This document shows positions 1,111-61,904 of a stretch of DNA of 64,000 nucleotides, piece after piece. The notes under the pieces are model-generated. The model was not told where the DNA came from. It ran no database searches and saw only the letters and a list, made by a program, of their open reading frames with translations. Numbering within the stretch: the first letter of the stretch is position 1; every line of letters begins with the position of its first letter. Source of the DNA: Macrostomum lignano. Taxonomy: Eukaryota. Where the stretch lies: assembly GCA_002269645.1 (NCBI GenBank), contig NIVC01001696.1:1-64000 (forward strand), in the 5' to 3' direction. The translations under genes and the position numbers were made by a program.

Positions 1111-2533
1111 CCGCCCGGCGAAGTTCCTGCAAAGGCCGGCACTTCTCAGCAAAATTGGAGACCAACCGACCGTAGAACTGGGCCAGTCCCAGAAACCGCT
1201 CGAGGTCCTTCTTGTTCTTTGGAGCTTCCACATCCTGAATCCGCTGAACCATGCCAGGATCTGGCTTGATCCCTTCCTCATCTATTATGTGGCCAAGAAA
1301 CTTCAAACTGCGTGCTTCCATGATGCACTTTGCTTCATTGACTTTAACATTTGCCGCTCTCAGCTTGTCGAGTATTCCTGTGCGAATGTTCTCCAGCTCT
1401 GCCTTCGTCACCGCACCCATGAGGACGTCATCTTGGTACACAATGACACCTGGATGTTCGCCTAGCAGCTTCTCCATCTCACGCTGGAACACAGACGGAG
1501 AGACTTTAATGCCGTACGGCAGCCTATTGAAGCGATAACAGCCAAATGGAGTGTTGATGGTGGTGATGTCTTTAGACTCACTGTCCAGCGGTATTTGATA
1601 ATAGGCATCAGAAAGGTCAAGACGGCAAAACAGCTTCTTGTTGGCCATCTTGGAAAACGCTGTCTCTATTGATGGAGTCAGGTATGTCTGATCCTGCCCC
1701 CACTGATTGACTGCTGTGTAGTCTCCGCAAATCCTCACTGACGCCTTGTCTGACTTCACCGTCACCACAATCGGGCTGCCCCACTCCGACGATGTCACTC
1801 TCTCGACTATTCCCGCCTTCTCCATCAAGTCCAGCTCCTTTTTTACTAACGGACGCAGCGCCAATGGCAGCTCTCTGGCTGGCTGGAAGATCGGCCCGGC
1901 TCCTGTCTTCAACCGAATCTCTCCGACTGCTCCCTTAATACCCAGTAAGCTCTCATACCTGTTGCTGCTGGGTGCCTTGGCCTCATCAGAATGGTGAGCT
2001 GGCAGCGAGTTGAGCAAATCCCGGCCTAGCAGTCCAAACTTTTGCTGGCAGTCGATGACAGGCAACTCAGCGGCAATGAAGCGACCGTCCGTGCCGTCAG
2101 TCTCCACCAGGCACTCCAGGATGCCGAGCTGCTTCATCACATGACCGTCGTAGGCCAGCATCCGGGACTTCGCCGATTTCAGTGGCGGTCTGCCAAGATC
2201 TTCCCAGATCTTTCTTGATATCAGCGAGCACGCCGCACCGCTATCCTTCTCCATCTTCACCTGCTTGCCGTTGATCTTGACCATGCAGAAAGCAGCCGGG
2301 GTGCCCTCACCGCAGTAGAAGACGGGCTCATAACTGGTAGAATCTGCAGACATTGCTTTTTCTGCGGCGAAGTGAGTTTTGGCGCTCCTGCAGACTCGGG
2401 CGAAGTGTCCGAGTTTTCCGCACTGACGACAGGTGGCTTTCAGCGCCCAGCAGTCAGTTGGCTTGCGATGAGACTTCTGGCCGCAGCGCTGGCAGATCTG
2501 GCTTCCACTCACATTCGGTCTCGACTTCTCCAC
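1061..2533 (-). pseudogene. pol: Gypsy pol: CCHC knuckles, aspartic protease, reverse transcriptase
   Basis: CQRC..H..C and CRQCGKLGHFARVC; protease KDSGAACSLI; RT WGSPIVV, RICGDY, LDLSDAY, YQDDVL, FLGH. Confidence 0.92.
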
Positions 2534-10621: not shown

Positions 10622-11779
10622 TCAGTCAGTCTTCCCGACGACTTTTCCGTTACTACTAACAGCGGCATTATTGTCCGCCAAGTCGTCGTCATCCTCAACT
10701 TCATTATTGTCGGACATCTCCGAATCCGAGCGGATGTCTCCATCAGTCTGGCCGGTGCGCAGCAGGTACAACACGATGCGGAATATGTAGTAGGTCCAGA
10801 CACAGTGCAACACCTGCAGCAGCACAAACATGCCAACGAACATGTAGTAGACAAGACAGGGTGGAATCTCCAGCGCTGGTAGACTGTGGGCGTACACTGA
10901 GTACACTACTCGGATTGGTAGAGCTACTAGCCTAGACAGGACCCAGACGATGAGAAACACGCCGAAAGTGGCGTCGCTCAATTTCTGAGCACCCAGGTAT
11001 TTTGCCAGCTTGCCAAACGACAGGAGGGGATCTACGGCGTCATGAATGACGAGTGTTAAAAGGCCAACCCTGGTGAAGTTGAACGCCCACGACAGCAAGA
11101 TCAAACCAATTGTAACCAGATGATGAGCTGTCAGCTCGTAGAAGTCCTTTCGTTTGATATCGGCTGTCAGAGTGATTAGGGAGGAAGCGTAGAAGCCCAG
11201 TTCGAGCATGTAGTACCAGAAGGCCGCTCGGCTGAGATGGTGCTGCGGCCAGTCAAGCCACAGGTGGCGGCTGTCCCAGAAGTGCGGCTCGTTCCACTGC
11301 AGCACGAGGCCATAGGTGACGAACACGGTGTAGTAGATGAGGTACCAGCTGCACTCGGTGAATCGAGCCAACTGAGTCGGTTTGTCGCGATTCCTTCGCA
11401 ACCGAAGCCAGTTTTCTACGGATCTCTCGCTGACGTTAGCCGTCCTAGCCAGCTCCTTCAGCTCGGCAGGTGCCAGGCGCCTTCGATGGCCCAGCAACGG
11501 TTCCAGAAGTCGCGTTCGAGCGGCGAACCAGCCCGGCAAGCGGACGCGGCGATCGGACAGTTTCAAGCGCTGTCCAAGTGGCTTAAGCAAACTGTAGTGC
11601 AGCATGCCTCGGAGGAGAAGCATCAGAATGGTGCACAGCACTCCGTAGAACCACAGGTCCGACAGTTGAGGCCGAGACACGCCCGGCACTACGGCTTTGA
11701 ACTTGTGCCACGGGTATGGATCGCGCAGCCACAGCCACCACGCTGGAGGCTGCTCTGGTGACCCATTGGAGGAAGACAT
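10622..11779 (-). CDS. CERS: Ceramide synthase (LASS/CerS; Hox-like domain plus TLC/Lag1 domain), intronless CDS, 385 aa
   Basis: ELKELARTANVSERSVENWLRLRRN (Hox-like); FTECSWYLIYY; YYMLELGFY; RKDFYELTAHHLVTIGLI; LVIHDAVD Lag1p motif. Confidence 0.95.
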   Translation of the reverse strand: MSSSNGSPEQPPAWWLWLRDPYPWHKFKAVVPGVSRPQLSDLWFYGVLCTILMLLLRGMLHYSLLKPLGQRLKLSDRRVRLPGWFAARTRLLEPLLGHRRRLAPAELKELARTANVSERSVENWLRLRRNRDKPTQLARFTECSWYLIYYTVFVTYGLVLQWNEPHFWDSRHLWLDWPQHHLSRAAFWYYMLELGFYASSLITLTADIKRKDFYELTAHHLVTIGLILLSWAFNFTRVGLLTLVIHDAVDPLLSFGKLAKYLGAQKLSDATFGVFLIVWVLSRLVALPIRVVYSVYAHSLPALEIPPCLVYYMFVGMFVLLQVLHCVWTYYIFRIVLYLLRTGQTDGDIRSDSEMSDNNEVEDDDDLADNNAAVSSNGKVVGKTD

Positions 11780-30287: not shown

Positions 30288-31949
30288 TCTAGGCTATACA
30301 TGGCTTAAGGGAAAGTTGCTGAAAAGTTTTGCGGTCACAGTTAAATTGAGTATAGTAGAGTTGAGTTGAGCCATAGACAGCTGGCTTGGCGGGCAATCAA
30401 TAGAAAAGTATGGGGACTTTGTCTATGACCCAGAGCTGCTGCAGCCAATAGGCATTCTCCACTTGATCAGCTTGATTATCATCAACTTGACTAATCTGTT
30501 GGGCCATAGACTAAATGAGTTCGAAATAATCTAATCTGTCAGTGTAGTGTCTTGTGGCCAAAGCCAATGTTTTTAACAACAATTTTCATGTTCTTTTTCA
30601 AATTTTAATTAACTAAAGACTATATATTACTTAACACTAAGTAAATCTTATTGTCTGATTTTTAAAATGATTTCAACTGGAAAAAATGTTTTTCTTTTGT
30701 TTTTTCTATTATTTCTCTAGGAATTCTTGGAATTTGCCGTTTGTTTCTATCTATTTTTATACTTGTGAACATAGTTCTGACCGTCCGAACATTCTTTTAA
30801 GACTTTTTTCTCGCATTGATCCCTCCATCTTCGGATACTTTCCGTCCTGTTGTATGCGTACAAGAATGTTAAATATAGTTATAGAAAATGCTCACGACTT
30901 TATTATTAAAGCTGAGTTCAGTGCTGGTTACTGAACAGTTAATCGTCAATTGCGTTTAGATTTCGTTTTTTCGTGTCTTTAGGACCGATTGTTTAAACAT
31001 TCAATCTTACGAAACCAGTTAGTTCAATGAAGATCAGGGCTGGGCGATGCCTGATGAGGACCGAGAACTATAAAAGTAGCAGCTTTAATCCAACTCTAGC
31101 CCATGCGCAATTAAGTACTAGAAAAACTATAGATAGGCCACTCCGCATATTTGCGTGTAAACTACATGCACTATCAGTTTAGTTGTAAATTAATTAAACC
31201 GAAGCAATTTTTGTACTTTTAAACACAAGGCTCATTATTGGCTCTTAATTACCCCCCCACGCCCCCCCCCAGTAGCTTAAGCCCTCTAACTGCGTCTTGA
31301 CTCTTTCCACACAAAACCACTACACCCCCTTACCGCCGCCGAATTTTATTGCCTTTCTGAGTGTTTTAGCCTTAAGCTGCTATGTACATTTCAGTTTGCG
31401 TTGGGTAATGTACGTTTATGACTGAACCAATTACAATAGCAAGCCAGCTGTTCCGTGTTTTCGTCTGATATTCTACATTGAATTGCTAACTATCTATATC
31501 ACTCACCAATTCCCTCATTTTATTTATCTCTGTCGTATGTACAGCTTTTTTGTTAAAACAGTTTCAGGCTACTAGTATTAAAGAGACAACCACACAATTG
31601 TGTGCCTTCTGTTTGCCCTTTTTTCTACACTAACAGGAGGGATCCACCGACCCCCCACCCCCCCCCCCTACCGTGGCTTGAACCACCGCCCACCCCTCCT
31701 TTTCAGAAAATCGATACCCTCAATTTCGTTGTCTATACTCTATCCCCTTCTGCGCGTACAACAAATGCACATTAAGCCAGTCCTGGGCGCAACGCGACCC
31801 CATTTTTGGCTCAGCCAATCACAATGCAACAGACGGACTACAATTTTATTATAGCGTAATAATAAAATCAATGGAATGGAATGGTCAGTTTTGTAAATCA
31901 TACTCAGAACTGCCATTCGAAAGTGAATACGCTATTTTTCCGAGAAAAA

Positions 31950-34765
<2,816 letters not shown>

Positions 34766-45635: not shown

Positions 45636-47489
45636 TCCTAGATCCCAGATCCTAGATCCCAGATCCTAGATCCCAGATCCTAGATCCCAGATCCTAGATC
45701 CCAGATCCTAGATCCCAGATCCTAGATCCCAGATCCTAGATCCCAGATCCTAGATCCCAGATCCTAGATCCCAGATCCTAGATCCCAGATCCTAGATCCC
45801 AGATCCTAGATCCCAGATCCTAGATCCCAGATCCTAGATCCCAGATCCTAGATCCCAGATCCTAGATCCCAGATCCTAGATCCCAGATCCTAGATCCCAG
45901 ATCCTAGATCCCAGATCCTAGATCCCAGATCCTAGATCCCAGATCCTAGATCCCAGATCCTAGATCCCAGATCCTAGATCCCAGATCCTAGATCCCAGAT
46001 CCTAGATCCCAGATCCTAGATCCCAGATCCTAGATCCCAGATCCTAGATCCCAGATCCTAGATCCCAGATCCTAGATCCCAGATCCTAGATCCCAGATCC
46101 TAGATCCCAGATCCTAGATCCCAGATCCTAGATCCCAGATCCCAGATCCTAGATCCCAGATCCTAGATCCCAGATCCTAGATCCCAGATCCTAGATCCCA
46201 GATCCTAGATCCCAGATCCTAGATCCCAGATCCTAGATCCCAGATCCTAGATCCCAGATCCTAGATCCCAGATCCTAGATCCCAGATCCTAGATCCCAGA
46301 TCCTAGATCCCAGATCCTAGATCCCAGATCCTAGATCCCAGATCCTAGATCCCAGATCCTAGATCCCAGATCCTAGATCCCAGATCCTAGATCCCAGATC
46401 CTAGATCCCAGATCCTAGATCCCAGATCCTAGATCCCAGATCCTAGATCCCAGATCCTAGATCCCAGATCCTAGATCCCAGATCCTAGATCCCAGATCCT
46501 AGATCCCAGATCCTAGATCCCAGATCCTAGATCCCAGATCCTAGATCCCAGATCCTAGATCCCAGATCCTAGATCCCAGATCCTAGATCCCAGATCCTAG
46601 ATCCCAGATCCTAGATCCCAGATCCTAGATCCCAGATCCTAGATCCCAGATCCTAGATCCCAGATCCTAGATCCCAGATCCTAGATCCCAGATCCTAGAT
46701 CCCAGATCCTAGATCCCAGATCCTAGATCCCAGATCCTAGATCCCAGATCCTAGATCCCAGATCCTAGATCCCAGATCCTAGATCCCAGATCCTAGATCC
46801 CAGATCCTAGATCCCAGATCCTAGATCCCAGATCCTAGATCCCAGATCCTAGATCCCAGATCCTAGATCCCAGATCCTAGATCCCAGATCCTAGATCCCA
46901 GATCCTAGATCCCAGATCCTAGATCCCAGATCCTAGATCCCAGATCCTAGATCCCAGATCCTAGATCCCAGATCGTAGATCCCAGATCGTAGATCCCAGA
47001 TCGTAGATCCCAGATCGTAGATCCCAGATCGTAGATCCCAGATCGTAGATCCCAGATCGTAGATCCCAGATCGTAGATCCCAGATCCTAGATCCCAGATC
47101 CTAGATCCCAGATCCTAGATCCCAGATCCTAGATCCCAGATCCTAGATCCCAGATCCTAGATCCCAGATCCTAGATCCCAGATCCTAGATCCCAGATCCT
47201 AGATCCCAGATCCTAGATCCCAGATCCTAGATCCCAGATCCTAGATCCCAGATCCTAGATCCCAGATCCTAGATCCCAGATCCTAGATCCTAGATCCCAG
47301 ATCCTAGATCCCAGATCCCAGATCCTAGATCCCAGATCCTAGATCCCAGATCCTAGATCCCAGATCCTAGATCCCAGATCCTAGATCCCAGATCCTAGAT
47401 CCCAGATCCCAGATCCTAGATCCCAGATCCTAGATCCCAGATCCTAGATCCCAGATCCTAGATCCCAGATCCTAGATCCCAGATCCCAG
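45636..47489. repeat. 14-bp satellite (ATCCTAGATCCCAG)n, ~1.85 kb, nearly invariant
   Basis: A dimer of 7-bp units; includes a block of eight C>G variant units at ~46970-47080. Confidence 0.98.
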
Positions 47490-47905
47490 AGGGTGACATT
47501 CGGTCAGAATACATGTCAGTAGTAAATTGTAATGTAAGTTACTCTACAAAATGTATGGTACAATTTTGTTCTCATGCAGTTGTATAAGATTTTTAAAAAG
47601 TTTCATTTTTTATTCCTTTTATAAAAGACCTGCTGCCTTTTTACATTTATAATTTCTTCGTTGTAAAAGTATTGTAAGGCCACGCTAAAAAACTCTCTCA
47701 GTGCTGACATAGATTCTCTACTTATGTTCGTACTAATTAATTCATAGGCTTGACCAGCACGTGACATAGACATTCACTCTTTCTTTGTTAAATTGTTAGA
47801 CACGAAATTAAATTTAATCTGTTCTCAAAAGTTGCTCAAATCGTAAAACGCTTTGCAGACTGAATTTTCTACAATTAATATAGCTTTCAAAAGCTGCTAT
47901 TTACG

Positions 47906-49886
47906 ATGCCAAACACCGTCAATGTTAGTGTCGAATACTGGTAAGTCATCAGCCTATGTTTTATTTTTAGAGAGTTTCATTTATCTCAGTATACGTACAT
48001 GTATATAGATTGTCTTTTTTAGACAGTAAATTTGATTGGGGTTACTGTGGAATTGCTGAGATGCCAAGGGTTAGTGGGGAATTGCTGAGATGCCAAGGGT
48101 TACTGGGGAATTGCTGAGATGCCAAGGGTTACTTGGGAATTGCTGAGATGCCAAGGGTTAGTGGGGAATTGCTGAGATGCCAAGGGTTAGTGGGGGAATT
48201 GCTGAGATGCCAAGGGTTAGTGGGGGAATTGCTGAGATGCCAAGGGTTAGTGGGGAATTGCTGAGATGCCAAGGGTTACTGGGGAATTGCTGAGATGCCA
48301 AGGGTTAGTGGGGAATTGCTGAGATGCCAAGGGTTACTGGGGAATTGCTGAGATGCCAAGGGTTACTGGGGAATTGCTGAGATGCCAAGGGTTAGTGGGG
48401 GAATTGCTGAGATGCCAAGGGTTAGTGGGGGAATTGCTGAGATGCCAAGGGTTAGTGGGGGAATTGCTGAGATGCCAAGGGTTACTGGGGAATTGCTGAG
48501 ATGCCAAGGGTTACTTGGGAATTGCTGAGATGCCAAGGGTTACTGGGGAATTGCTGAGATGCCAAGGGTTACTGGGGAATTGCTGAGATGCCAAGGGTTA
48601 CTTGGGAATTGCTGAGATGCCAAGGGTTACTGGGGAATTGCTGAGATGCCAAGGGTTAGTGGGGGAATTGCTGAGATGCCAAGGGTTAGTGGGGGAATTG
48701 CTGAGATGCCAAGGGTTAGTGGGGAATTGCTGAGATGCCAAGGGTTACTGGGGAATTGCTGAGATGCCAAGGGTTACTTGGGAATTGCTGAGATGCCAAG
48801 GGTTAGTGGGGGAATTGCTGAGATGCCAAGGGTTAGTGGGGGAATTGCTGAGATGCCAAGGGTTACTGGGGAATTGCTGAGATGCCAAGGGTTAGTGGGG
48901 AATTGCTGAGATGCCAAGGGTTACTGGGGAATTGCTGAGATGCCAAGGGTTAGTGGGGAATTGCTGAGATGCCAAGGGTTACTGGGGAATTGCTGAGATG
49001 CCAAGGGTTACTGGGGAATTGCTGAGATGCCAAGGGTTACTGGGGAATTGCTGAGATGCCAAGGGTTACTTGGGAATTGCTGAGATGCCAAGGGTTAGTG
49101 GGGGAATTGCTGAGATGCCAAGGGTTAGTGGGGGAATTGCTGAGATGCCAAGGGTTAGTGGGGGAATTGCTGAGATGCCAAGGGTTAGTGGGGAATTGCT
49201 GAGATGCCAAGGGTTACTGGGGAATTGCTGAGATGCCAAGGGTTAGTGGGGAATTGCTGAGATGCCAAGGGTTACTGGGGAATTGCTGAGATGCCAAGGG
49301 TTACTGGGGAATTGCTGAGATGCCAAGGGTTAGTGGGGAATTGCTGAGATGCCAAGGGTTACTGGGGAATTGCTGAGATGCCAAGGGTTACTGGGGAATT
49401 GCTGAGATGCCAAGGGTTACTGGGGAATTGCTGAGATGCCAAGGGTTAGTGGGGGAATTGCTGAGATGCCAAGGGTTACTGGGGAATTGCTGAGATGCCA
49501 AGGGTTACTGGGGAATTGCTGAGATGCCAAGGGTTACTGGGGAATTGCTGAGATGCCAAGGGTTAGTAAAATCTCTACTGATCATCTATAATTCCCCTCC
49601 CCCCCAACCTTACAGCAGCGTCCAATGAGACTACGAACCACGCTATGAGCACCTGCGCGAAGCAATTCTCAGCGCGTGCCCTAGCGGAGTTCAGGTATCC
49701 GGTGTTGCTGGTCGTCGGGGCGCTTACGAGGTGACAGTCAATGGCCAATTGATTTTCTCTAAGCTGAAGATGCGCTGTTTCCCCGTTGAGAAACAGGTGG
49801 TCGACGAGGTGAAGAAAGCCACGAATGGTGTGAAGCCTAAGAAGCTGGGATCAGATACCGGAGGTTGTGGATGTCATCTATTGTAG
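47906..49886 (+). CDS. MIEN1: Selenoprotein W2/MIEN1-like (Rdx family), paralog A; exons 47906-47940 and 49616-49886; Sec TGA at 49626-49628; 101 aa
   Basis: MPNTVNVSVEYC|SVQUDYEPRYEHLREAIL...GRRGAYEVTVNGQLIFSKLKMRCFP...GCGCHLL*. The frame stays open and homologous for 85 codons past the TGA; the TGA is shared with paralog B; SECIS in the 3'UTR. Confidence 0.92.
48040..49566. repeat. 29/30-bp minisatellite (GGGGAATTGCTGAGATGCCAAGGGTTACT)n in the paralog A intron
   Basis: About 52 units filling most of the intron. Confidence 0.98.
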
Positions 49887-50044
49887 CGCTATTGGCTTCG
49901 TTTTTACTTAATTTTCTTGATTTCTCTCTCATAAACGAAGTCTTTTTTCAATGAATAAACAGATTTTGATATTTGAAATGTATATTTCTACTTTAAGTAG
50001 ACTAAATAGTAGCATAAATTGAATTCAGAAACAAAAACAAATAG

Positions 50045-50184
50045 AAAAACCAGCGCGTGCCCAGACGTATGACGACAGGCCTCGGCGTTAAAATCCTAAT
50101 TGGAACCGTCCGCAGCATCGCACCGGATGGGCGCCACTTGTCTGACACACCTATCTGGCTGAGTCTGTGCGCGCGTTGGTTTTT
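50045..50184 (+). promoter_or_regulatory. SECIS element (atypical) of paralog A
   Basis: ATGA 50069-50072 / TGA 50143-50145 core; GACAGG:CTTGTC and GGCGT:GCGCC helix II; AAAA 50090-50093; TCC-TAATT-GGA mini-stem; 22-position basal helix. Confidence 0.85.
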
Positions 50185-50579
50185 TGGTTTCATTTAAACA
50201 AAAAAACTGTGAAAAAAGTTACGTTTATAAGAGGAGAAAGAAAGAAAATAAGTTGTGGCAGAAAAGTGTCTTAAAAGTAACTTTTGATTTATTCGGCATC
50301 AAATATACATGTATCTTGAAACATAGTTCATTTTTTTGCTTCATGCAGTCGCATGCTGCGCTACTTTTAATATCAAGGTTGAATACTTTTCTAGCGGCTT
50401 TTTTATGAAGGGCTACTTAAAAAAAGAATAAAAATACTAAATAGTTTGCTTGACTTGTGGACCATTAAAGATATGTACATTATGCTTAAATTAGAAAAAA
50501 TATACTATAGTTAGGGCAAGTTAGCTTAAAAATTTGTTAATTAGAAGAAAGTTAAAAGATAACTTTAAAATGGAAGAAA

Positions 50580-51440
50580 GGGCGCAGCTGGCACTGTGGC
50601 TGAGACGGCTCTGAGGGTCCTAAGCTGTCAGTCGAGATGCTCCTGGAGCTCTGCCATCTTGGGCATGAGAGGCTGCCTGTTAGAAGCAGGAAGATTGCGG
50701 ATCTCGCTCTGGAATTCAAGCGGCAGGCGGCTCCAGAGCGCGTAGACGTAGCTGTCGAGGGTGCAGGCAAGCTCGCCGAGGCGGAGGAGCTGGCCGGTGG
50801 CCAGGTGGAGGGCGTCTGTGAATTCCTTGAGCTCACCCAAGTCGGAGGCAGAGCTGAAGTGAAAGGCGAGGAGACGCTGGAAGGAGGCGTTCTTTTTCTC
50901 CTGCGTGTCGGCGTAGTTGGCCTGGAGGACACGCAGCAGTCCTCCACGTAGGCGCCCGGTTGGCAGGCGTCGAGGGCACCGAGATTCTTGAGAGCGGAGC
51001 CGGAGAGCAAACCGCGGAGTGCCTCAAATTTGTCGACGTCTTTGAGGCTGGAGCGGTCGACGCGGTAAACGAAGGCATCCCAGAAGCCCGGAAATGCAGC
51101 AGGGTCCGTACCGTCGAAGGTCGGGAGAAGCACGTTCTTGAGAATGGTGGAGCGGATGAGCCCGGTCGGATCGTGAGCATCTGATGCGGGCGTTGAGGCA
51201 GCTGGTGTCGAGGCTGGACGGACGGTGGCAGCTAGCGAGCTGTTGCATCAGGTGCTGGTTCTGCTGCATCATCGCGGGTCATGGAGGCGAGGTAAGGCGT
51301 TGACGTCAACTCCGGGTTAACAGGAGAGGCGGCAGAGATCGGTCTGAGCAGCAGGATCGGAGCCATTGCTCCGGCTGAAGAAGCTGGTGACGGGTCACTG
51401 AGGTCAAAGGGCGGTTGCTGATTTCCGTCAAGGCCGCGCG
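50580..51440 (-). pseudogene. BEL/Pao retrotransposon gag relic (DUF1759-like), frameshifted
   Basis: LLPTFDG...FWDAFVYRVDRSSLKDVDKFEALRGLLSGSA; flanking segments are in other frames; no pol. Confidence 0.75.
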
Positions 51441-51454
51441 CTCTTTGTACGTTC

Positions 51455-51728
51455 CCAGAGAGCTACATTAAACTATGGTGTCATTGCCTTCGATGGTATG
51501 GCAGAGAGCTACATTAAACTATGGTGTCATTGCCTTCGATGGTTGGCAGAGAGCTACATTAAACTATGGTGTCATTGCCTTCGATGGTATGGCAGAGAGC
51601 TACATTAAACTATGGTGTCATTGCCTTCGATGGTATGGCAGAGAGCTACATAAACGATGGTATCATGGCCTTTGATGGTATGTCAGAGAGCTACATTTAA
51701 CGATGGTATCATGGCCTTTGATGGTATC
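51455..51728. repeat. 46-bp minisatellite
   Basis: Six units of AGAGAGCTACATTAAACTATGGTGTCATTGCCTTCGATGGTATGGC. Confidence 0.93.
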
Positions 51729-52363
51729 ATTGCAGGCAGCGGAGTTCGATGTTATCACTGTCTTCCTGGGCTAGCTTGTAGCAGCTGTGCTGAAGAGGGC
51801 CCTGTGGAGGCGGTGCCAGCAGGGACGAAAGCGGAGTCTAGACAGAGACGGCAGGAGACACGGCGGCAGCTGCGCGGTGCATCGGAGAAGTTCGGAGCAG
51901 TGCCTCTGGAGAGACAACTGCTCTGGGTAGGGTACTCGTACATCGTAGATTTTAAGATTAGTGCGAGCAGTGTTGCTCTGATGTGAAGATCTTTGTGGTG
52001 ATATCTTGACGGGCAGCTGGTTGGCAGTAATATTGCATGGCGACCACACGCAAAAATACAGAAGGAAATACTATTTTTTCAGCTTACATGTGTAAATCTG
52101 ACAGAAACATTTAATTTGCATGTCCTACACCAGCGTTTTTATTAACTCTAGGAATTTTCCATTAAAAGATAACCGTACAAATTTGATGGCTAAAGTGTAA
52201 AATATGATTATATACTCTTGTCATGCAAAATTATACAGACTGAACTTTAATACATTGTATTCAAATGTCAAAAAAATCTTATCAAATGTTAAAGCTGTCT
52301 GCAGTCTGCTGCATTATGCTTCATCGAGATTGAATTGAGCTGATTTACACCGGCCTAGCTTAT

Positions 52364-52637
52364 GGCCAGATGTGCAACCGACAGCTCCGCCGCAGCTATT
52401 TTGCGGCGCATCTGAAGACTGCGTTCAGTCCAATTAAGGACTGGGGTCGCCACACACCCTGAATTACCCCAGCTAATGCTGGCACCAATTTTACAGCTGG
52501 GTGAACTGAAGCAAATAAATGCAGAGTTTACATGTAAAATATCTTCTTGATCGTGCTGCACACAAAATTGTTCCAGTGGGATCGGGAATCGAATCCCCAA
52601 CCTTCAAGTCGTGAGTTTGACGCTCAACCACTAGGCT
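52364..52637 (-). mobile_element. tRNA-derived CORE-like SINE (copy 3)
   Basis: Minus strand A-box TAGCCTAGTGG and B-box GGATTCGATTCC; homologous to copies 1 and 2. Confidence 0.8.
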
Positions 52638-53009
52638 AAAACATTTTATAATAAATATTTAATTGCCTTAAAAATATAAAAATGAATACACCTTTTTTAC
52701 GCATGCATCTATTACATACAAAACATGTATGCGTTTTTCCTTTACCTTTAACATGCTTTACGCTAACTAAATTTTACATAATGTAGTAATACAGTTTTCT
52801 GACTTTGTTCTGTATTAAAAATGCTTTTGGTTTTTACATTTTGCGGAAACATTTGTTAACTTTTATGTTTGTTTTTATCGCGGTAATACAGTTTTTATAT
52901 AAAATGAATTTTCAGTGCTAAAAAAATAAGGAAACGGCAACGCATCATAATAAAATATTAAATAAACCTTAACATTCTTAGAGACAGAAGTTACTTTACG
53001 TCGTTTACG

Positions 53010-56000
53010 ATGTCGCACCCCGTTACCGTTAGTGTTGAATACTGGTAAGTATCATTTTATTAATACTTTAACAGTTGAACTTGATGCACTAAAAAGATTA
53101 AAACATAGGGGATAGGTGGGTGGGGCTACCTTCTTCTTTAGTAGTACTATATACTAACTTTGATGCCATTGTATCCAAATGTCAAATCTGTTGAATCGGT
53201 TTTGAATCGATAGAAATCCACTAGGCCTATACTGAAATAGTTAGCTACAAGAATCTGTTAGGCCTAGTTTTTACAATAAATGAATTTAATTAGCAAACTA
53301 CGCCTAATTCCATTCTCTCTTGCTGTCCAATTGGTACAAACAGTTTTTATGAGGATAGGCCTAGTATAGAAGCGTTAAAGCTATACCCAAAGTTCCAGAC
53401 CAGTATCAGTCTAATAGGCCAACTATTTTTATATTTGTACATGCATGTGTTTCTATTATAATAAAGTTTGTGGCTATTATTAAGTGTTTAGGCCTATTTA
53501 GAGATGGATAAATAGTCTATTTTTGTATAGGCCCTATATGTAGAGTAATTATTATTAGTGTTGCTTCTCATCTCAACAAAACAAGAATATTTTATACAAT
53601 ATTTCTATTGCATTAATTTTGAAGTAAGTTGTATTAATATATTTATATTCTTGAAGGGGTAATTAAGCTAAGTTGGGAATCCTACAATGGCCACCAAGTT
53701 GTTCCAGGGGGTTCTATCTGGCTATTCACAATCCTACGGCTGTCACCAAATTGTTAGAGGATTTTATTTTTAATTTTAACCTATCCTGCTGATGCTACAG
53801 AACTCTTGAGTATCCTGGAATGAGTTTTATAATTTTAAAGGTTCATGTATAAGCTAGCCATTTAAACCAGTTAGAATTACTAGAATTACTAAGTTACGAG
53901 GTTAGAACTATGGGCTTTCATGTAAGTACGGATTGCCCTAGTAGCGCGTAGTGCCTGAGCAGCAAGACACTGTTTAGCTAAGGGGGTGACTAAGTCCTAA
54001 AAAGCAGTCATCTCCAATGGACCAAGGGTGCCCAGTGAATTCTTGTTTCCTATCTACAGATTTGCTTGTGTCATTCACGACCTGTCATTGGTTGTTCGAT
54101 TCGAAATAGCCACTGGGATAATTCTCCCTTGTCTATTGGCTGATCACGCCTCTGTTCTTTGCGGGTCCGCTTATTGGCTCATAGACTGTTAGTCTGATAC
54201 TCTTGGTAGATTCCACCTTTGCCCAATGAGCAGTCGCTCTCAGCTTTTGACAAATAAAGAAGGCTTGAACACCTCTAATTTTCTTAGGCAAATCGCCTCT
54301 ATATTCAGGATCGAGTAAAAAGCTCAGTCGCCTCTTTGGGTGCAAAACTCCCATGTATTTATAATAAGATTGGGGTGGGGGACCAGATTCATTTAAACAA
54401 AAAATATTTTCCAAGTTATGTTTCCATAGTGACGCAAAAATTTAAATTGGGCCTACATCAATGTTAAGTTTATTTACTTGCTAAGAACCATAGTCGGAAT
54501 AGTTTCCATGCATTTTGGTGCTTAGCATTTTGGTACTCCAGATTGCTTTTTGGTGCTCTAGTTTATGATGCCTAAATAATAATAAAAAGTAATATAATAG
54601 CAAATATAATAAATACTTTACAAAACATTTAGTATTTCTAATGAAAGCTATAATCCAGTAGGCCTATCTATTTTTTTTTCAATTGGCATGTCTTTTAAAT
54701 TTTGAAAAATCAGGTCAATTTAATTGTATGCACTTTTCGAATCCTTTATTACAATTATAAGGTTGCACTGCACTTAGCATGCATGCTAAGAAGAGTTATT
54801 TAGGTAAAGATGAAATCTATCAATAATGCTAAATGTAGTTTTGATCAAAATTATGGAATGGCACAAATCTATTCTAGTATTGATTTCTTGAGTCACATGA
54901 TTCTGTTTTATTTCTTAAAAAATCAAATTGAAAGAAAAAAATTACATGAAACAAGACCATTTTTTAATTTAAACCCAGGTCAGCTTAACAAAATGAATAC
55001 CTAAGTTATTAAATAAATAAGTATTATAAAGCAAAGTGCTTACTGCTAAATAGGGCTCATTTTTTATATTTTTGTGTTAACTCTAATTTTTAATTTAGGC
55101 ACCAAAAAGCAAACCGGGGTACCAAAATGTAGGGCAACAAAAAGGGTAGATACCGTCTAGATCATGCTAGGTGCATACCCAAATAAAACTTGAATAATTA
55201 CAAATGTATGCCAGAAAATTGAGTGTAGTGAATTAATTTTATAGATAAACAAAGTTTATTTACTTGCTGAGAACCATAGTCTTGATCATTCATGCCCTAA
55301 CAAAAATTAAATATATAAATGTATGCCAAAAAATAGAGTGCACACCTATTCTCAAAACTAAGCTGATTTTGCGACATTAAGTGACCTTTATATTTTTGTA
55401 TTTTTATATTTGTATTTTTATATTTTTATATTTTTGTGTTAACTCTAATTTTTAATTTAGGCACCAAAAAGCAAACCGGGGTACCAAAATGTAGGGCAAC
55501 AAAAAGGGTAGATACCGTCTAGATCATGCTAGGTGCATACCCAAATAAAACTTGAATAATTACAAATGTATGCCAGAAAATTGAGTGTAGTGAATTAATT
55601 TTATAGATAAACAAAGTTTATTTACTTGCTAAGAACCATAGTCTTGATCATTCATGCCCTAACAAAAATTAAATATATAAATGCATGCCAAAAAATAGAG
55701 TGCACACCTATTCTCAAAACTAAGCTGATTTTGCGACATTAAGTGACCTTTTTTATATTCTACTTTATAATAACTTTTCTATGATTCTATAAAATATATA
55801 CCAGGTATGCATGCATACTATTTTCTTAATAGTGATGTACACCAACTGTACATGCCTACTTTTGGCATGCAAGCAGTGTTGGGCACTATTAATGAAAATC
55901 TTAACTTTGTTAATGGCAAAAGCATTAGTGTTAAAACAAAAAAATCTTAACCTATTCACTTTTAATTTTGTTAAATTAACTAAAATTTAACTGATAATTG

Positions 56001-58936
56001 CTATTAAGTGTTAATCTATTAAAGTTACCACAGAAAATACAGAAATCTTGCAAAACAAACTTCATAATATACTGTCTGCTTTTCTACCTTTTAGCAAAAC
56101 ACTGAGATCATTTAAGGGATTTATAAGCTAAGAAAGTAAAAAATAATAATTTAAAAAACTTTTATGTGTAGTAGGGCAATATTTTAGGAATGGGAATTAG
56201 TAGCAAAGCAGATATGCTTTTTGCCTACTGTCAGTAGTTTAGGTTTAGGAAAGTAATTAGAGTGGGGGAAAAGCACTAGTTTTCGGGATTCCTTAGAAGT
56301 ATAGAGCAGTTTGGGGCTTGGGAAGCAGATTTGTTCATTCGCAGACTCGCAAAGTCTCAAATTAGTCTCAAATCACCGCGAGGCTATGGTTTTGTCTCGC
56401 ATAGAGGCGCCTAACCGCAGTACCTCTGTGAAACTTGTCTCTGCCTGGCTGAAAGCTTGTAATGAGTGAGTAGGCTGGGTTGGAGGGTAATAGTGGATCG
56501 GGAAGGGCTGTGGGTAGCTATATAGGAAGGCAGGCCTATACCTGTTCCAGTTGGTGCTTTGACGGTCTCCTTCAAGTGCCCTCTGAGCAAACAGCCAGCG
56601 ACCCTATTATAGCTGGAGTGTGCCAGAACCAGGACTGAGTCTGAGCAGGACGAGACCATTGGCATGGTCACTATAGAAATGGTCGGTTGGCGAAGCAAAG
56701 GGTGAAATAGTCCCGGCGATTAGCCCTCCTGCCGCTTCAAAGATAAGAGACTGTCTGGCAAGAGTACCCGGGGTTTAGTTGGGGGGGGAGGCTCTTTTGG
56801 GCTGCCACGGCTGTGGGGGCGGTCATATGACCAGTTTTTGGCTTTTCTAACCCATGGGATTCCTGACTGGTACATCCTTCCGCTGTCACTGTCCCCCAGG
56901 AAGGTTTTTGATTTGTCAATTGCCCTTTGTACAGTCCTCTTAGCTCCAATTAGGATCTCAGTGTACATAAGTACACTCCCAACCTGGAATTAATTTATAT
57001 CTAGTGGTGTAAGAGCCTAATCAATGGCTGAGGCGCCAAATACTTATTACTGTTACTGCTTGGGAAGCAGATTCGTTCGTTTGTGGACTCGCGAAGTCTC
57101 AAATTAGGAAAGGTAAGAGGCAGGAAAAATATTAGGAAATACGTAAAACTGTTAGTGGTAGTCGATGCCAACAACAGTACACTACAAGGTAGTCAATGCC
57201 TAGCTTTTCCCACAAGTAAAGTAACAATAACCATTGCATGCTGATTTTCTTTTCTTTTTTTGAAATAAAAAAGTTTTGTTAAATATTTTGGTTTTCCTGT
57301 GTCACTCCTTATCACTAAATTAATAGAAATAGGGAAGCAGGAAGCCTGGTGGCAGCAAATCTACCAAAATCTAAAACCAGTAAATCCACTAGTAAAATCC
57401 TTAGCAATAGAAAACCAGTAGCCCTAACCGCGAGGTACCACGCATGTCCATATGTATATAATACTACTAAAAATAAGCATATGGTAAAAAGGTCAGAGGT
57501 AACTCATTTATTTGAAACTTGAAAGCTAATTGATTAATAATAAAATACAAATATAAAGGTTGTTTCAATAGCATTAGTAAGTGCAGCAGAAAGTTAAGAA
57601 AAATTGGGAAAGAAGTGAATCAAAGTAATTGATGCTCATGCACAAGCAATAACATAATTTTAATTCATTATTAAAGTTCATTAGTAAGAAGTTATTATAT
57701 TTGCATCATCATTGTTAAAAACAAAAATGTTAATTATGTATTTAGATAAATTGAAATACATATTGCAATGTAACTTCTTGCCAGATTTATATTTTTGTTC
57801 TTTTTTGCATCCTTGGTCATTGACATTGCCATTAACGTTAAGGATGAATAAGGGATATTATTAATGCAAATTTGTTAATCCATTAGTGCAAAAAATCCTA
57901 ATGGCAGTCTATTAATGTTAATGAAAAATTCTAATGCTTATTAATGGATAAATGCTTATTAATGGACTAGTGCCTAACACTGCATACAAGGCCAATGCAC
58001 ACCTAAATTTTTGGGTGTACACTATACTATACTATATGCATGATCCAGTGTTTAGGCTAAGAACTATGTAAATACCAGTGTCAAGATCATATATTAGTAT
58101 AGGCCTAATGTATACCAGAACAAAATTTGCTTCTTGACTCTAGCTCATAGCTTTTATACTCATAAGCCATATATGCGCAACTGCTGGCCAACCTGGCCAA
58201 TCCAGCCACTGTAAATTATATAAGCTTTGTATTATATGCTAAGCTAGGTAATAGTCTAGCCTATTGACATAAGAGATCAGGCTGAGTGGCAAGTGGGAGC
58301 CAATACAAAAGCAGGGCCACAAAAGCCTTAACATGATCTGGGGCAACAAGGATGTGGAATTTTATTTGTATACACATTTGTGGACTAGTGTACTGTTGTT
58401 GCCAACCCAAGAAAAAGCAAGGGAAGAAAAGGAAAGAAAGCAAATTAAGAAAAAACAAATATGTGACTGTGACAATCTGCAATCAAAAGCAATAAGTAGT
58501 ATTAATAGCTTTAAATCATATTTAAAGGGTTGAAGCCAGTCTTTGCTTAGTTAGATGCCGAGACATTTTACTGGAGCAGCACAGTCATAATTACTCCTGC
58601 CGTTTACCCAGTTGCGATTTTTATTGAGCATATATCCTTACTGGTTATCCCAATTTCACCCAATGCAGTGGCAGCGGATGAGGCTACGAACCCCGCTATG
58701 AGCACCTGCGCAGAGCTATTCTCAGCGCGTGCCCCAGCGGGGTTCAGATCTCCGGTCACGATGGTCGCCGGGGCAGCTTCGAGGTGACAATCAATGGCCA
58801 GCTGATTTTCTCCAAGCTGAAGCTGCACGGCTTTCCTGATGAAAATCAGGTTGTCGAACAGGTGAAGCGAGCTACAAATGGCGACAATCCTAACGTACTG
58901 GAAGATTCTCAAAGTCCCGGATGTAATCTGCTGTAA
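53010..58936 (+). CDS. MIEN1: Selenoprotein W2/MIEN1-like (Rdx family), paralog B; exons 53010-53044 and 58669-58936; Sec TGA at 58679-58681; 100 aa
   Basis: MSHPVTVSVEYC|GSGUGYEPRYEHLRRAIL...GRRGSFEVTINGQLIFSKLKLHGFPDE...SPGCNLL*. Very similar to fish SelW2 (VEYCGGUGYEPRY...GSFEIEINGQLIFSKLE, from memory); SECIS present. Confidence 0.93.
55063..55757. repeat. ~362-bp tandem duplication in the paralog B intron
   Basis: Two near-identical copies (e.g. TACCGTCTAG at 55151 and 55513). Confidence 0.92.
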
Positions 58937-59093
58937 TGCTGTGCTTCGCTATTAACTTTTCATTTACAATCTCTCCGAAGAGCGTTTTCTCTTTTTTACA
59001 ATGAATAAACAAATTTAGACGGTCAAAAACGTATATTTCTACTGTAAGTAGACTAAATAGTAGCATGAATTGAATTTCGTCAAAAACAAATAG

Positions 59094-59255
59094 AAAAACC
59101 AGCGCGAGCCCAGACGTATGACGACAGGCCTCGGCGTTAAAATCCTAATTGGAACCGTCCGCACCAGTACACCGGATGGGCGCCACCTGTCTGATATTAT
59201 TGGCTAAAACTTTGCTTGACATTGTTTGGCTAAGTCTGTGCGCGCGTTGGGTTTT
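59094..59255 (+). promoter_or_regulatory. SECIS element (atypical) of paralog B
   Basis: ATGA 59118-59121 / TGA 59192-59194; GACAGG:CCTGTC (G-C where paralog A has G-U); same AAAA, mini-stem and extra hairpin. Confidence 0.85.
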
Positions 59256-59639
59256 TTGGTTTCATTTATAAACAAAAAATTACATTGATATGATTAGAAA
59301 GAGAGAAAATCACTTTGTGGCAGAAAAGTGTCTTAAAAGTAATTTTTGATTTATTAAGCGTCAAATATATCCTAAAACATTGTTTTTTTGCTTTCTGTGC
59401 ACTCGTATGCTGTGCAACATTTATTCAGGTTGAAAACTTTTTACCCGCGGTATTTTTGGACCGATACAATTAAGCTCTGTGTTTTATTTAAAGGCCACTT
59501 AAATTGAAATATAAAATATAATAAATCAGAATTCTACGAGTGTAAGTTACTCGCCCACTATAAAATCTCTCAATTTTAACTTTATTAAAGAGTAAAAAGT
59601 TTTCGAGTTTTCTAATTTTTACTTTTCACCTATCCAGTG

Positions 59640-59950
59640 GTCCTAGCAACAGATATGTCCTTTTCTGGCTTCCCTAGCAACAGATATCTGTGTCCTTCTG
59701 GCTTCCCTAGAAACAGATATCTGTGTCCTTCTGGCTTCCCTAGCAACAGATATCTGTGTCCTTCTGGCTTCCCTAGCAACAGATATCTGTGTCCTTCTGG
59801 CTTCCCTAGCAACAGATATCTGTCCACTTCTGGCTTCCCTAGCAACAGATATCTGTGTCCTTCTGGCTTCCCTAGCAACAAATATCTGTCCCCTTTTAGC
59901 TTCCCTAGCAACAGATATCTGTCCCGTTCTGGCTTCCCTAGCAACAGTTA
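59640..59950. repeat. 33-bp minisatellite (TTCTGGCTTCCCTAGCAACAGATATCTGTGTCC)n
   Basis: About nine units. Confidence 0.93.
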
Positions 59951-60214
59951 TATTTCCTTGGCTTTGTTATAAAAATTTTATGTTATTATGGGATTGGAAA
60001 AGTTTTCTGAGGTCTGTCTTCATAAGTTATGCGTGTACATTTGCTAGACTTAGTCGCAGTGCATTGCATTTTGATGGTTCCGACAAGATCAGCTTTTGTT
60101 TATTCCAACGGTTTTAAACTTTTTCGAATTCTGAAATTTAGAAGAATGTTGTTAGATGTAGAAAGTGGTTGATATTGAATAACATGATATAGTGCATGTC
60201 CAGTAAGGGAATCT

Positions 60215-60610: not shown

Positions 60611-61803
60611 TCAGCTGGAAGCAGCGGCAGCAGCGGCCGTTTTTGCCAGCAGAGATCGCATCGCGGCGCTCTCCTGCGCGTCGGCCACGGCCGTCGGCGT
60701 GACGCCTTTGATGTTGGGCCTCGTCGGGTCGGCACCGGCGCTGAGAAGCAGCTCCGCCATGCGCAAGTGGCGGTGCATTGCGCAATAGAACAGTGCCGTC
60801 TGGCCCTGCGGGTGTTTGCGTGTGCAAAGGTTTGGGTCTAGTGACATATGTATGCACAAAGGGGAGCCATGAAAGGGGCCGTATCCGACAACCGCACAAT
60901 GGCCCCAGAAAAATTGCACTCTCCCAGTAAGTAAATGAAAGAGGTAACCATCGAGGCTCGACGAATAAGAGGAACTGTATACTTTTGGCACCTCTTTGGC
61001 AGGTATTGCATAGGTATGAGACAGCTAGGGGCTCCCACCAAGAGACAGGGCTCCCACCAAAAGACAGGAGCGCCCACCAAAAGACAGGAGCGCCCACCAA
61101 GAGACAGGGCTCCCACCAAAAGACAGGAGCGCCCACCAAGAGACAGGAGCGCCCACCAAGAGACAGGAGCGCCCACCAAGAGACAGAATTAAGGGTCCAC
61201 CAAGAGATAGGAGGCTTTTTGACGGGCGTTGGCGACAAACCAAAAATACTTCGAAATCTTTCGCAATCGAGTGGTTCAACGAATTTTGAAATTTGGCAAA
61301 ACTTCAGAGGCTTAGGGTTGTTAGGTTAGGGTAGGTTTTGCAATTTGTCGGCTGTTTAATGGCTTGGCGAATGTGGAATGTCAACGTCGTGGCGGACCTG
61401 CAGCCCCACGCACTCACCTGATCATCAACCGCGTCAGCGCTGGCTCCAGCATCGAGTAGTGCCTTCGTCACATCCGGGTTGCCATTGTTCTTCAGCATGG
61501 CGCAGCGCACGATGGCGCAGCATCCGCTTGCGTCTCTGGCCGAGAGCAACTCGCTTCTCATAGGTTCTTCACCCTGCTCATCGACAAGAGCCTTGTCTGA
61601 CTTTGACTCCCTGTCCACTGCATCGCTCTCCGGACAGAAGTTCAACAGCAGGCTGATGGCTTCGAGCTTCTCGCCGTCAACAGCGTAGTGCAGTGCTGTG
61701 GAGCCTTTGCGATCCCGTTTGAGTCTGCTGGCACCGCGGTCCAGCAGCTGCCTGATGCTCGGCAGTATGCCTCTGTAGCACACTAGCATGAGGGCCGTCT
61801 TGC
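60611..61803 (-). CDS. Ankyrin-repeat protein, last two exons (61803-61418, 60805-60611); FANK1-like; 5' exons lie outside the window
   Basis: GKTALMLVCYRG...GSTALHYAVDG...LLDAGASADAVDDQ|GQTALFYC...LLSAGADPT ankyrin repeats; resemblance to the FANK1 C-terminus is from memory. Confidence 0.85.
61020..61185. repeat. 19/20-bp minisatellite in the ankyrin gene intron
   Basis: Units GGAGCGCCCACCAAGAGACA. Confidence 0.9.
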
Positions 61804-61904
61804 CTGCGGGGGGTTGCGAAATTTTAGGATCCAAGGACTGCTAACCAAGGTCAGTTAAAGGAGCTCAGAGCAGCTCAGCGGTAATTACGATCAAGGGTCA
61901 GAGA

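What the first reader, a model, noticed from the sequence alone, without database searches (positions are those of the whole stretch)
47906..58936. Tandem pair of hidden SelW2/MIEN1 selenoproteins with a predicted non-canonical CxxxU redox motif
Seen: two 2-exon genes missed by the ORF track because each has an in-frame TGA (49626, 58679) followed by ~85 conserved codons and a SECIS. Joining exon 1 (ends TAC TG|) to the first AG after the pyrimidine tract gives VEYC-SVQ-U-DYEPRY (A) and VEYC-GSG-U-GYEPRY (B), with three residues between Cys and Sec in both. In B no AG exists at the position needed to make CxxU. Known: Rdx-family proteins (SELENOW, SELENOT, SELENOH, SELENOV, SelW2/MIEN1) use CxxU or CxxC. 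Inference: a lineage-specific CxxxU thioredoxin-like selenoenzyme subfamily, duplicated and diverged around Sec (Q-U-D versus G-U-G), probably with altered redox potential or substrates.
Basis: partly seen in the sequence, partly recalled or inferred. Interest (0 to 1): 0.9.

Follow-up and report, generated by a model that had tools for sequence, protein, structure and literature searches.

The report
Flatworm SelW2 selenoprotein pair, odd spacing
Two neighbouring genes in the flatworm Macrostomum lignano encode small selenium-containing redox proteins of a known family (SelW2/MIEN1). The genome sequence suggests, but cannot prove without RNA data, that their active-site cysteine and selenocysteine lie one residue further apart than in every relative examined.

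Summary
The window is Macrostomum lignano contig NIVC01001696.1. There are two same-strand, two-exon Rdx-family genes, A (47906-49886) and B (53010-58936). Each has an in-frame TGA where relatives carry Sec or Cys, 84-85 conserved codons after it, a C-terminal CaaX box, and one shared SECIS-like element in the 3'UTR.

The closest relatives are MIEN1 and fish selenoprotein W2a, so the genes are ordinary SelW2 selenoproteins. GenBank and UniProt already hold truncated models.

The CxxxU claim is supported by genome comparison only:
- Nematostella, Pomacea and lamprey share the same intron inside the Cys codon, and exon 2 starts ag|T GGN NNN TGA.
- M. lignano B keeps that acceptor and carries one extra codon: ag|T GGC AGC GGA TGA.
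- In both A and B the first AG lies exactly 10 nt before the TGA.
- About 70 homologues are all CxxU or CxxC.
- Three contigs agree, which rules out an assembly error.

A has a CAGCAG tandem acceptor that can give canonical CVQU, and B has an AG 6 nt downstream that would give CGU.

I could reach no transcripts, and Rfam does not recognise the SECIS-like element. Verdict: real selenoprotein genes, with CxxxU probable (about 0.6) but unproven.

The parts
47906..47940 (+). Gene A coding exon 1 (MPNTVNVSVEY + TG of the Cys codon). The donor TG|gtaagt starts at 47941.
   Evidence: Read directly and translated. It is 83% identical to B exon 1 over 52 nt, and this is the only similarity upstream of exon 2. 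The donor pattern occurs only twice in the window with an intact GT.
47941..49615 (+). Gene A intron, phase 2, inside the Cys codon. It holds a 29-bp x 52 minisatellite at 48039-49565.
   Evidence: There is no AG between 49567 and 49613, and a pyrimidine tract precedes the acceptor.
49613..49618 (+). Gene A tandem acceptor CAGCAG (NAGNAG). The first AG gives C-SVQ-U and the second gives C-VQ-U.
49616..49886 (+). Gene A coding exon 2, from the first AG. Sec codon TGA at 49626-28, stop TAG at 49884-86, C-terminal CaaX box CHLL.
50069..50145 (+). Gene A SECIS candidate. ATGA at 50069-72, helix II of 6 + 5 bp, unpaired AAAA at 50090-93, partner TGA at 50143-45. It is flanked by a long helix I (about 50046-50066 with 50166-50187).
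   Evidence: Rfam is negative.
53010..53044 (+). Gene B coding exon 1 (MSHPVTVSVEY + TG). The donor TG|gtaagt starts at 53045.
   Evidence: The same exon is present in L002.
53045..58668 (+). Gene B intron, phase 2, 5.6 kb. The acceptor is aatgcag|T.
   Evidence: The acceptor context ag|TGG is the same as in Nematostella, Pomacea and lamprey.
58669..58936 (+). Gene B coding exon 2, T GGC AGC GGA TGA... Sec codon at 58679-81, stop TAA at 58934-36, CaaX box CNLL. An alternative AG at 58673-74 would give C-G-U.
   Evidence: The sequence is identical in L002 and L003.
59118..59194 (+). Gene B SECIS candidate. The first 46 nt are identical to gene A. All substitutions relative to A fall in loops or change G.U to G-C.
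   Evidence: Rfam is negative.

Best explanation
These are two tandemly duplicated SelW2/MIEN1-type (Rdx family) selenoprotein genes of Macrostomum lignano.

Gene structure. Each gene has a 35-nt first coding exon that ends inside the redox Cys codon. An ancestral phase-2 intron follows. The second exon carries the Sec-UGA, the rest of the thioredoxin-like domain and a C-terminal CaaX box. A conserved SECIS-like stem-loop in the 3'UTR recodes the UGA.

Splicing and motif. Splicing to the first (ancestral) AG places three residues between Cys and Sec: CGSGU in B and CSVQU in A. The cause is a one-codon insertion that predates the duplication. In A the CAGCAG tandem acceptor probably also produces a CVQU (canonical CxxU) isoform.

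Inferred function. The proteins act as small thiol/selenol oxidoreductases that cycle through a Cys12-Sec16 selenenylsulfide. They are membrane-tethered by geranylgeranylation of the CaaX Cys, as described for MIEN1.

Shown versus inferred. Shown: gene structure, family, selection and the genomic spacing. Inferred: which AG is used, Sec insertion, redox chemistry and prenylation.
For: Identity of the genes:
- Pfam Rdx scores E 1.4e-18 and 5e-17.
- The PDB best hit is MIEN1 2LJK at E 1.3e-17, then SelW 2NPB at E 1.7e-6. Both alignments need a one-residue gap between Cys and the Sec position.
- A profile search returns MIEN1 and 'selenoprotein W2a'.
- The CaaX Cys is invariant in the 18-sequence alignment.

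Sec codon:
- The TGA aligns with the TGA of homologues, which the collection prints as W. Their Logan transcripts do not translate with table 11.
- Post-TGA dN/dS is 0.34 with dS 0.60.

SECIS candidate:
- It is the only AUGA...GA element with an adjoining helix in either 3'UTR.
- The first 46 nt are identical in A and B, against 67% identity at third codon positions.
- All substitutions are in loops or change G.U to G-C.

Splice site:
- Nematostella has ttttag|T GGT GGA TGA GGG TAC.
- Pomacea has tgcag|T GGC AAA TGA GGC TAT.
- Lamprey has tgcag|T GGT GGC TGA GGG TAC.
- All three have exon 1 ending TAY TG|gt.
- B has atgcag|T GGC AGC GGA TGA GGC TAC, which is the same acceptor plus one codon.
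- The first AG is 10 nt before the TGA in both A and B, while their second AGs are at different positions.
- Both first AGs are CAG, the motif enriched at M. lignano cis-acceptors (PMC8629364). Neither has an AG in the 38-47 nt upstream.

Not an assembly error: three contigs are identical.

Expression: the GenBank CDS comes from an RNA-seq-based annotation (PMC5730564).
Against: - No transcript or junction evidence could be obtained.
- A's CAGCAG acceptor allows canonical CVQU, and two CAGs in tandem are commonly both used (general knowledge of NAGNAG acceptors).
- B has a competing CAG 6 nt downstream.
- Every one of about 70 homologues is CxxU or CxxC, and Mariotti et al. [quoted passage not shown] The prior for a working CxxxU is therefore low.
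- Rfam SECIS_1 does not match the candidate even in a 106-nt search.
- The AAAA lies 17 nt after AUGA on the 5' strand, against about 12 nt in the Rfam consensus.
- A conserved AATAAA lies upstream of the candidate SECIS.
Confidence: 0.6

Rival explanations
1. These are the same genes, but the working proteins keep canonical or near-canonical spacing. Gene A is spliced mainly at the distal AG of CAGCAG to give CVQU. The one-codon-longer form is a minor NAGNAG by-product. Gene B, which cannot make CxxU, is a diverging paralogue whose CGSGU product has a weakened or changed activity.
For: - The second AG of A gives C-V-Q-U in frame.
- All homologues are CxxU or CxxC (PMC3316567).
- A and B share the hexamer GCAGCG around the second AG of each. 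This allows an alignment in which the two second AGs are homologous.
Against: - That alignment needs two independent 3-nt events at the same site.
- The ungapped alignment puts both first AGs at -10 from the TGA.
- B's first AG matches the outgroup acceptor context.
- B is as constrained as A: dN/dS is 0.34, the SECIS candidate is intact and three copies are identical.
Confidence: 0.22
2. Gene B is spliced at the downstream AG (58673-74), which the inserted AGC created. The product is C-G-U, one residue shorter than canonical.
For: The join is in frame. The site is a CAG only 6 nt from the first AG, a distance at which two AGs can compete (general splicing knowledge).
Against: - It is not the first AG after the branch region.
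- It is preceded by purines (gtggcag).
- No homologue has CxU.
- A has no AG at that position.
Confidence: 0.08
3. The TGA is a genuine stop, or the copies are decaying pseudogenes, and no selenoprotein is made.
For: - Rfam finds no SECIS.
- An AATAAA precedes the candidate SECIS.
- The deposited gene models start after the TGA.
Against: - There are 84-85 open, homologous codons after the TGA, with dN/dS 0.34 at dS 0.60.
- The TGA sits exactly at the Sec position of relatives.
- The 3'UTR element is far better conserved than synonymous sites.
- Rfam SECIS_1 found a SECIS in only 1 of 4 control SelW2 genes, so its silence here means little.
Confidence: 0.05
4. The extra codon is a sequencing or assembly artefact.
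For: None beyond the rarity of the motif.
Against: - Three separate contigs carry the identical gcagtggcagcggatgagg.
- A and B both have the 10-nt spacing with different sequences.
- The site is not a homopolymer.
Confidence: 0.01

Closest known systems
Selenoprotein W2 (SelW2): fish/frog selenoprotein W2a-c, and the flatworm SelW2 genes of Schmidtea mediterranea and Schistosoma japonicum
   Same: - Rdx domain, with Sec at the same aligned position followed by GYEPRY-type sequence.
- First coding exon ending in the Cys codon.
- C-terminal CaaX box.
- Tandem duplicates also occur in zebrafish (SelW2a/b).
Sources; PMC3316567; PMC3828610.
   Different: - All described SelW2 proteins have CxxU. 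Here the genome dictates CxxxU from the ancestral acceptor (or CxU in B).
- There is an extra residue in the ACPSGV loop.
- The SECIS-like element has a longer helix II and a branched apical part.
MIEN1 / C17orf37 / Rdx12 (PDB 2LJK)
   Same: It is the best solved-structure match, at E 1.3e-17 over residues 5-97. The length is similar and it shares the CaaX tail (CVIL against CNLL / CHLL).
   Different: MIEN1 has CxxC (CEPC) with Cys in place of Sec, and it has no SECIS. The alignment needs a one-residue gap in the motif.
SELENOW (SelW1; PDB 2NPB)
   Same: Same Rdx fold family and a CGAU-type motif. Matched at E 1.7e-6.
   Different: It is more distant, has no CaaX tail and has CxxU spacing.
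NAGNAG tandem splice acceptors
   Same: Gene A has CAGCAG at the intron-exon boundary. Use of either AG adds or removes one codon (Ser).
   Different: Here the toggled codon would lie between the two redox-active residues of a selenoprotein. Whether both AGs are used was not tested.

Membership tests
Rdx family (Pfam PF10262: SelW, SelT, SelH, Rdx12) | Significant match to the family profile over the whole domain | tested here: met
   B scores 67.3 bits (E 1.4e-18) and A scores 62.3 bits (E 5e-17). The cut-off is 22.6 bits, and profile positions 1-73/74 of 74 are covered.
Rdx family (Pfam PF10262: SelW, SelT, SelH, Rdx12) | CxxC / CxxU redox motif between strand 1 and helix 1 | tested here: inconclusive
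   - Splicing at the first (ancestral) AG gives CxxxU in both genes.
- A's distal AG gives CxxU.
- B can only give CxxxU or CxU.
- Which AG is used could not be tested.
Rdx family (Pfam PF10262: SelW, SelT, SelH, Rdx12) | Thioredoxin-like fold | not tested
The fold is inferred only from sequence matches to 2LJK and 2NPB.
SelW2 / MIEN1 subfamily | Closer to SelW2/MIEN1 than to SelW1 | tested here: met
   MIEN1 scores E 1.3e-17 against SelW at 1.7e-6. The named hits of the profile search are MIEN1 and selenoprotein W2a.
SelW2 / MIEN1 subfamily | C-terminal CaaX (prenylation) box | tested here: met
   The tails are CHLL (A) and CNLL (B). The Cys is invariant across 18 aligned family members. Prenylation itself was not tested.
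SelW2 / MIEN1 subfamily | Conserved phase-2 intron splitting the redox Cys codon (TG|N) | tested here: met
   M. lignano A and B, Nematostella, Pomacea and lamprey all have exon 1 ending TAY TG|gt.
Eukaryotic selenoprotein gene | In-frame UGA at a position where homologues have Sec or Cys, with a conserved ORF downstream | tested here: met
Eukaryotic selenoprotein gene | SECIS element in the 3'UTR (AUGA...AA...GA kink-turn core) | tested here: inconclusive
   - There is one candidate per gene with an AUGA / UGA core, helix II and unpaired AAAA. It is near-identical between the paralogues.
- The bare pattern arises in 3.7% of shuffles.
- Rfam SECIS_1 is silent, but it also missed 3 of 4 control SelW2 genes.
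- The AUGA-to-AA spacing is 17 nt, against about 12 nt in the Rfam consensus.
Eukaryotic selenoprotein gene | Sec actually incorporated | not testable with these tools
   This needs 75Se labelling, mass spectrometry or ribosome profiling.
NAGNAG alternative acceptor | Two AGs 3 nt apart at the acceptor, both with a favourable -3 base | tested here: met
   Gene A has CAGCAG at 49613-18. Gene B lacks it.
NAGNAG alternative acceptor | Both junctions present in mRNA | not testable with these tools
   No M. lignano transcripts are in the searchable collections.

The most novel reading that the evidence does not exclude
A one-codon insertion between the redox Cys and Sec became fixed in a Macrostomum SelW2 ancestor. 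It has been kept under purifying selection in two paralogues, making the first Rdx/thioredoxin-fold selenoproteins with CxxxU. In gene A, a CAGCAG tandem acceptor lets splicing switch the active site between CxxxU and CxxU, so one gene would make two selenoenzymes with different redox properties.
Probability: 0.3. Interest if true: 0.65.

Novelty: new variant of a known kind. Interest (0 to 1): 0.45.

Why it matters
CxxU/CxxC spacing is treated as invariant in SelW, SelW2, SelV, SelT, SelH and MIEN1. If a working CxxxU form exists, it is a natural experiment on how loop length sets the reactivity of a selenenylsulfide in a thioredoxin fold. The biochemical function of that fold in the SelW family is still unknown.

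The case also shows how selenoprotein genes get mis-annotated. The deposited models are truncated after the UGA, and one is a chimera.

If RNA data show canonical CVQU in gene A, the finding reduces to two more SelW2 genes in a flatworm, which is ordinary.

Tried and rejected
1. Rfam on the whole window, on both 3'UTRs and on the 106-nt candidate gave no SECIS hit. In controls, SECIS_1 found 1 of 4 homologous SelW2 genes, so I treat the negative as uninformative.

2. The search for M. lignano transcripts or other Macrostomum homologues gave nothing beyond the genome's own truncated models.
- Word-indexed searches with B and with an 18-sequence profile.
- Exact look-ups of 12 guessed products: CxxxW, CxxW, CxW, forms starting at an internal start codon, and forms starting just after the TGA.
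- A contig look-up.

3. The 1.84-billion-representative search and the cluster look-ups gave many SelW2/MIEN1 relatives, all CxxU or CxxC. None could be identified as a flatworm.

5. Other exon 1 candidates: the donor pattern occurs only at the two proposed exons.

6. SL trans-splicing as an explanation of the 'YEPRY' start of the deposited proteins: the ATG of the spliced leader would be out of frame at all three AGs (worked out by hand from the SL sequence in PMC8629364). This remains unexplained.

7. The literature search for CxxxU in Rdx proteins returned only kinetoplastid SelK, which is not a thioredoxin fold.

8. The supplement of the flatworm selenoproteome paper is not held.


Full report
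**Origin of the window.** The 83-aa product of B's exon 2 is on record from GCA_002269645.1, contig NIVC01001696.1. Its cluster mates are PAA68382.1 / PAA73720.1, 'hypothetical protein BOX15_Mlig033428g4, partial [Macrostomum lignano]', and UniProt A0A1I8HGK5, 'Selenoprotein W'. NIVC00000000 is the Mlig_3_7 assembly, which was annotated from RNA-seq-derived transcripts (PMC5730564). The genes are not wholly unknown, but the public models start after the UGA. The UniProt model is a chimera of A exon 2, an antisense ORF (50637-50951) and B exon 2.

**Observation.** All coordinates check out.
- Gene A: ATG at 47906; exon 1 ends TAC TG at 47940 followed by gtaagt; first AG at 49614-15; TGA at 49626-28; stop at 49884-86.
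- Gene B: ATG at 53010; exon 1 ends at 53044; first AG at 58667-68; TGA at 58679-81; stop at 58934-36.
- Splicing to the first AG gives VEYC-SVQ-U-DYEPRY in A and VEYC-GSG-U-GYEPRY in B.
- B has GG where an AG would be needed for CxxU.

**What the genes are.**
- Both spliced proteins hit Pfam Rdx (E 1e-18 and 5e-17, full profile coverage).
- The best solved structure is MIEN1/C17orf37 (2LJK, E 1.3e-17), ahead of SelW (2NPB, E 1.7e-6). Both alignments place a one-residue gap between Cys and the Sec position.
- A profile search of 5.8 billion proteins returns MIEN1 and fish 'selenoprotein W2a'.
- The C-terminal Cys of a CaaX box (CHLL, CNLL) is invariant across the family alignment.
- SelW2 genes are already described in flatworms: three in Schmidtea and one in S. 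japonicum (PMC3828610).
- Tandem SelW2a/b duplicates are described in zebrafish (PMC3316567).

**Are they alive?**
- A and B are similar only in exon 1 (52 nt, 83%) and from the TGA to about 500 nt past the stop. The introns have diverged beyond recognition.
- After the TGA, dS is 0.60, dN is 0.20 and dN/dS is 0.34.
- Three M. lignano contigs carry B with an identical acceptor-to-TGA sequence. This excludes an assembly artefact.

**SECIS.**
- Rfam gives nothing at any threshold.
- A pattern-plus-pairing scan finds exactly one AUGA...GA element with an adjoining helix in each 3'UTR, at homologous positions: 50069-50145 and 59118-59194.
- The element has AUGA opposite UGA, a helix II of 6 + 5 bp interrupted by a 4x1 loop, an unpaired AAAA, two small apical hairpins and a long outer helix.
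- Its first 46 nt are identical in A and B, while third codon positions are 67% identical.
- All substitutions lie in loops or change G.U to G-C.
- The bare pattern arises in 3.7% of shuffled UTRs.
- The AAAA is 17 nt from AUGA on the 5' strand (12 nt on the 3' strand), against about 12 nt in the Rfam consensus. That difference probably explains the Rfam miss.
- As a control, Rfam SECIS_1 found a SECIS (31.6 bits, below its own threshold) in only one of four homologous SelW2 genes.
- I rate the element a probable but atypical SECIS.
- A conserved AATAAA (49954-59 / 59004-09) lies upstream of it. Poly(A) site data are needed.

**The CxxxU question.**
- Survey: of the roughly 70 relatives whose N-termini I read, every one is CxxU or CxxC. 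In these, TGA is printed as W, and the Logan transcripts fail to translate with a standard table. [quoted passage not shown]
- Gene structure in three outgroups:
  - Nematostella...GAA TAT TG|gtgaga ... ttttag|T GGT GGA TGA GGG TAC.
  - Pomacea: GAA TAC TG|gtaagt ... tgcag|T GGC AAA TGA GGC TAT.
  - Lamprey: GAG TAC TG|gtgagg ... tgcag|T GGT GGC TGA GGG TAC.
- The intron is therefore ancestral, and exon 2 ancestrally begins T GGN NNN TGA, 7 nt from AG to TGA.
- M. lignano B reads atgcag|T GGC AGC GGA TGA GGC TAC. This is the same acceptor and the same flanking codons with one extra codon (10 nt). B's first AG is thus the orthologue of the canonical acceptor, and the extra residue lies inside the exon.
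- In A the first AG also lies exactly 10 nt before the TGA. The second AGs of A and B are at different distances (7 and 4 nt before the TGA).
- The simplest history is one insertion before the duplication, retained in both copies over dS 0.6 under purifying selection.
- Both first AGs are CAG, the motif enriched at M. lignano cis-acceptors. They follow AG-free stretches of 47 and 38 nt.

**What remains open.**
- No transcript could be reached, so which AG is used is inferred.
- CAGCAG acceptors are often used at both AGs, so A may well make both CSVQU and CVQU.
- B's inserted AGC itself created the downstream AG.
- No literature in the held library mentions CxxxU in an Rdx protein. The only CxxxU found is kinetoplastid SelK.

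**Mechanism (inferred).** The proteins are about 100 residues long with a thioredoxin-like fold. Cys12 would sit at the end of strand 1 and Sec16 at the start of helix 1. They would cycle between selenol/thiol and selenenylsulfide. Geranylgeranylation of the CaaX Cys would anchor them to membranes, as reported for MIEN1 (my knowledge of the MIEN1 literature, not tested here). One more residue in the loop would change ring size and probably redox potential. The direction and size of that change are unknown.

**Verdict.** The gene pair and its selenoprotein nature are solid, and they are ordinary for a free-living flatworm. The CxxxU spacing is the most parsimonious reading of the genome (about 0.75 for B, about 0.6 for both genes as the main product), but it is unproven. 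It is a new variant of a known kind, of moderate interest, and could be settled quickly with existing RNA-seq data.

Noticed in passing
window 58679-58687 and 49626-49634: Two deposited models both begin at YEPRY: GenBank PAA68382.1 / PAA73720.1 (83 aa) and UniProt A0A1I8HGK5 (397 aa). YEPRY is the first complete codon after the AG formed by TGA+G (58681-82 / 49628-29), not the codon right after the TGA. Either the transcript models start at that AG or the CDS was trimmed. The ATG of the M. lignano spliced leader (...TTGCATG) would be out of frame there. An S. japonicum SelW2 isoform lacking exon 1 has been reported (PMC3828610).
   Followed up: partly
window 49616-51000 and 58700-58936: UniProt A0A1I8HGK5 'Selenoprotein W' is a chimeric prediction. 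It joins A exon 2, the unrelated ORF 50637-50951 and B exon 2. Its A-type part differs from the window's A at 4 residues, so a further A-like copy exists in the genome.
   Followed up: partly
window 49954-49959 and 59004-59009: A conserved CAATGAATAAACA, containing an AATAAA signal, lies about 70 nt after each stop codon and about 110 nt upstream of the SECIS candidate. If it were used as the poly(A) signal, the SECIS would be lost from the mRNA.
   Followed up: no
window 49985-50030 and 50250-50293 (B: 59037-59080, 59299-59345): Two further 3'UTR blocks are about as conserved between A and B as the SECIS candidate, well above synonymous-site identity. Their sequences are GTATATTTCTACTnTAAGTAGACTAAATAGTAGCAT and TTGTGGCAGAAAAGTGTCTTAAAAGTAA. 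Their function is unknown.
   Followed up: no
window 48039-49565: A 29-bp minisatellite (52 copies, 96% matches) fills most of gene A's only intron.
   Followed up: no
window 47000-47490; 51456-51727; 55061-55751; 59642-59951: Other tandem arrays lie around the gene pair: 14 bp x 36 just upstream of gene A, 46 bp x 6 between the genes, 362 bp x 1.9 inside B's intron, and 33 bp x 9.5 downstream of B.
   Followed up: no
A residues 31-37 / B residues 31-37 (ACPSGVQ): Both M. lignano proteins carry a second one-residue insertion relative to all aligned homologues, in the loop after helix 1.
   Followed up: no
window 1061-2533 (-): A 490-aa ORF with reverse transcriptase and retroviral-type aspartyl protease domains. 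It looks like an LTR-retrotransposon pol fragment.
   Followed up: no
window 10622-11779 (-); 31881-32615 (+); 61304-61834 (-): Other host gene pieces in the window: a TLC-domain (TRAM/LAG1/CLN8) ORF, a protein kinase domain exon and an ankyrin-repeat ORF.
   Followed up: no
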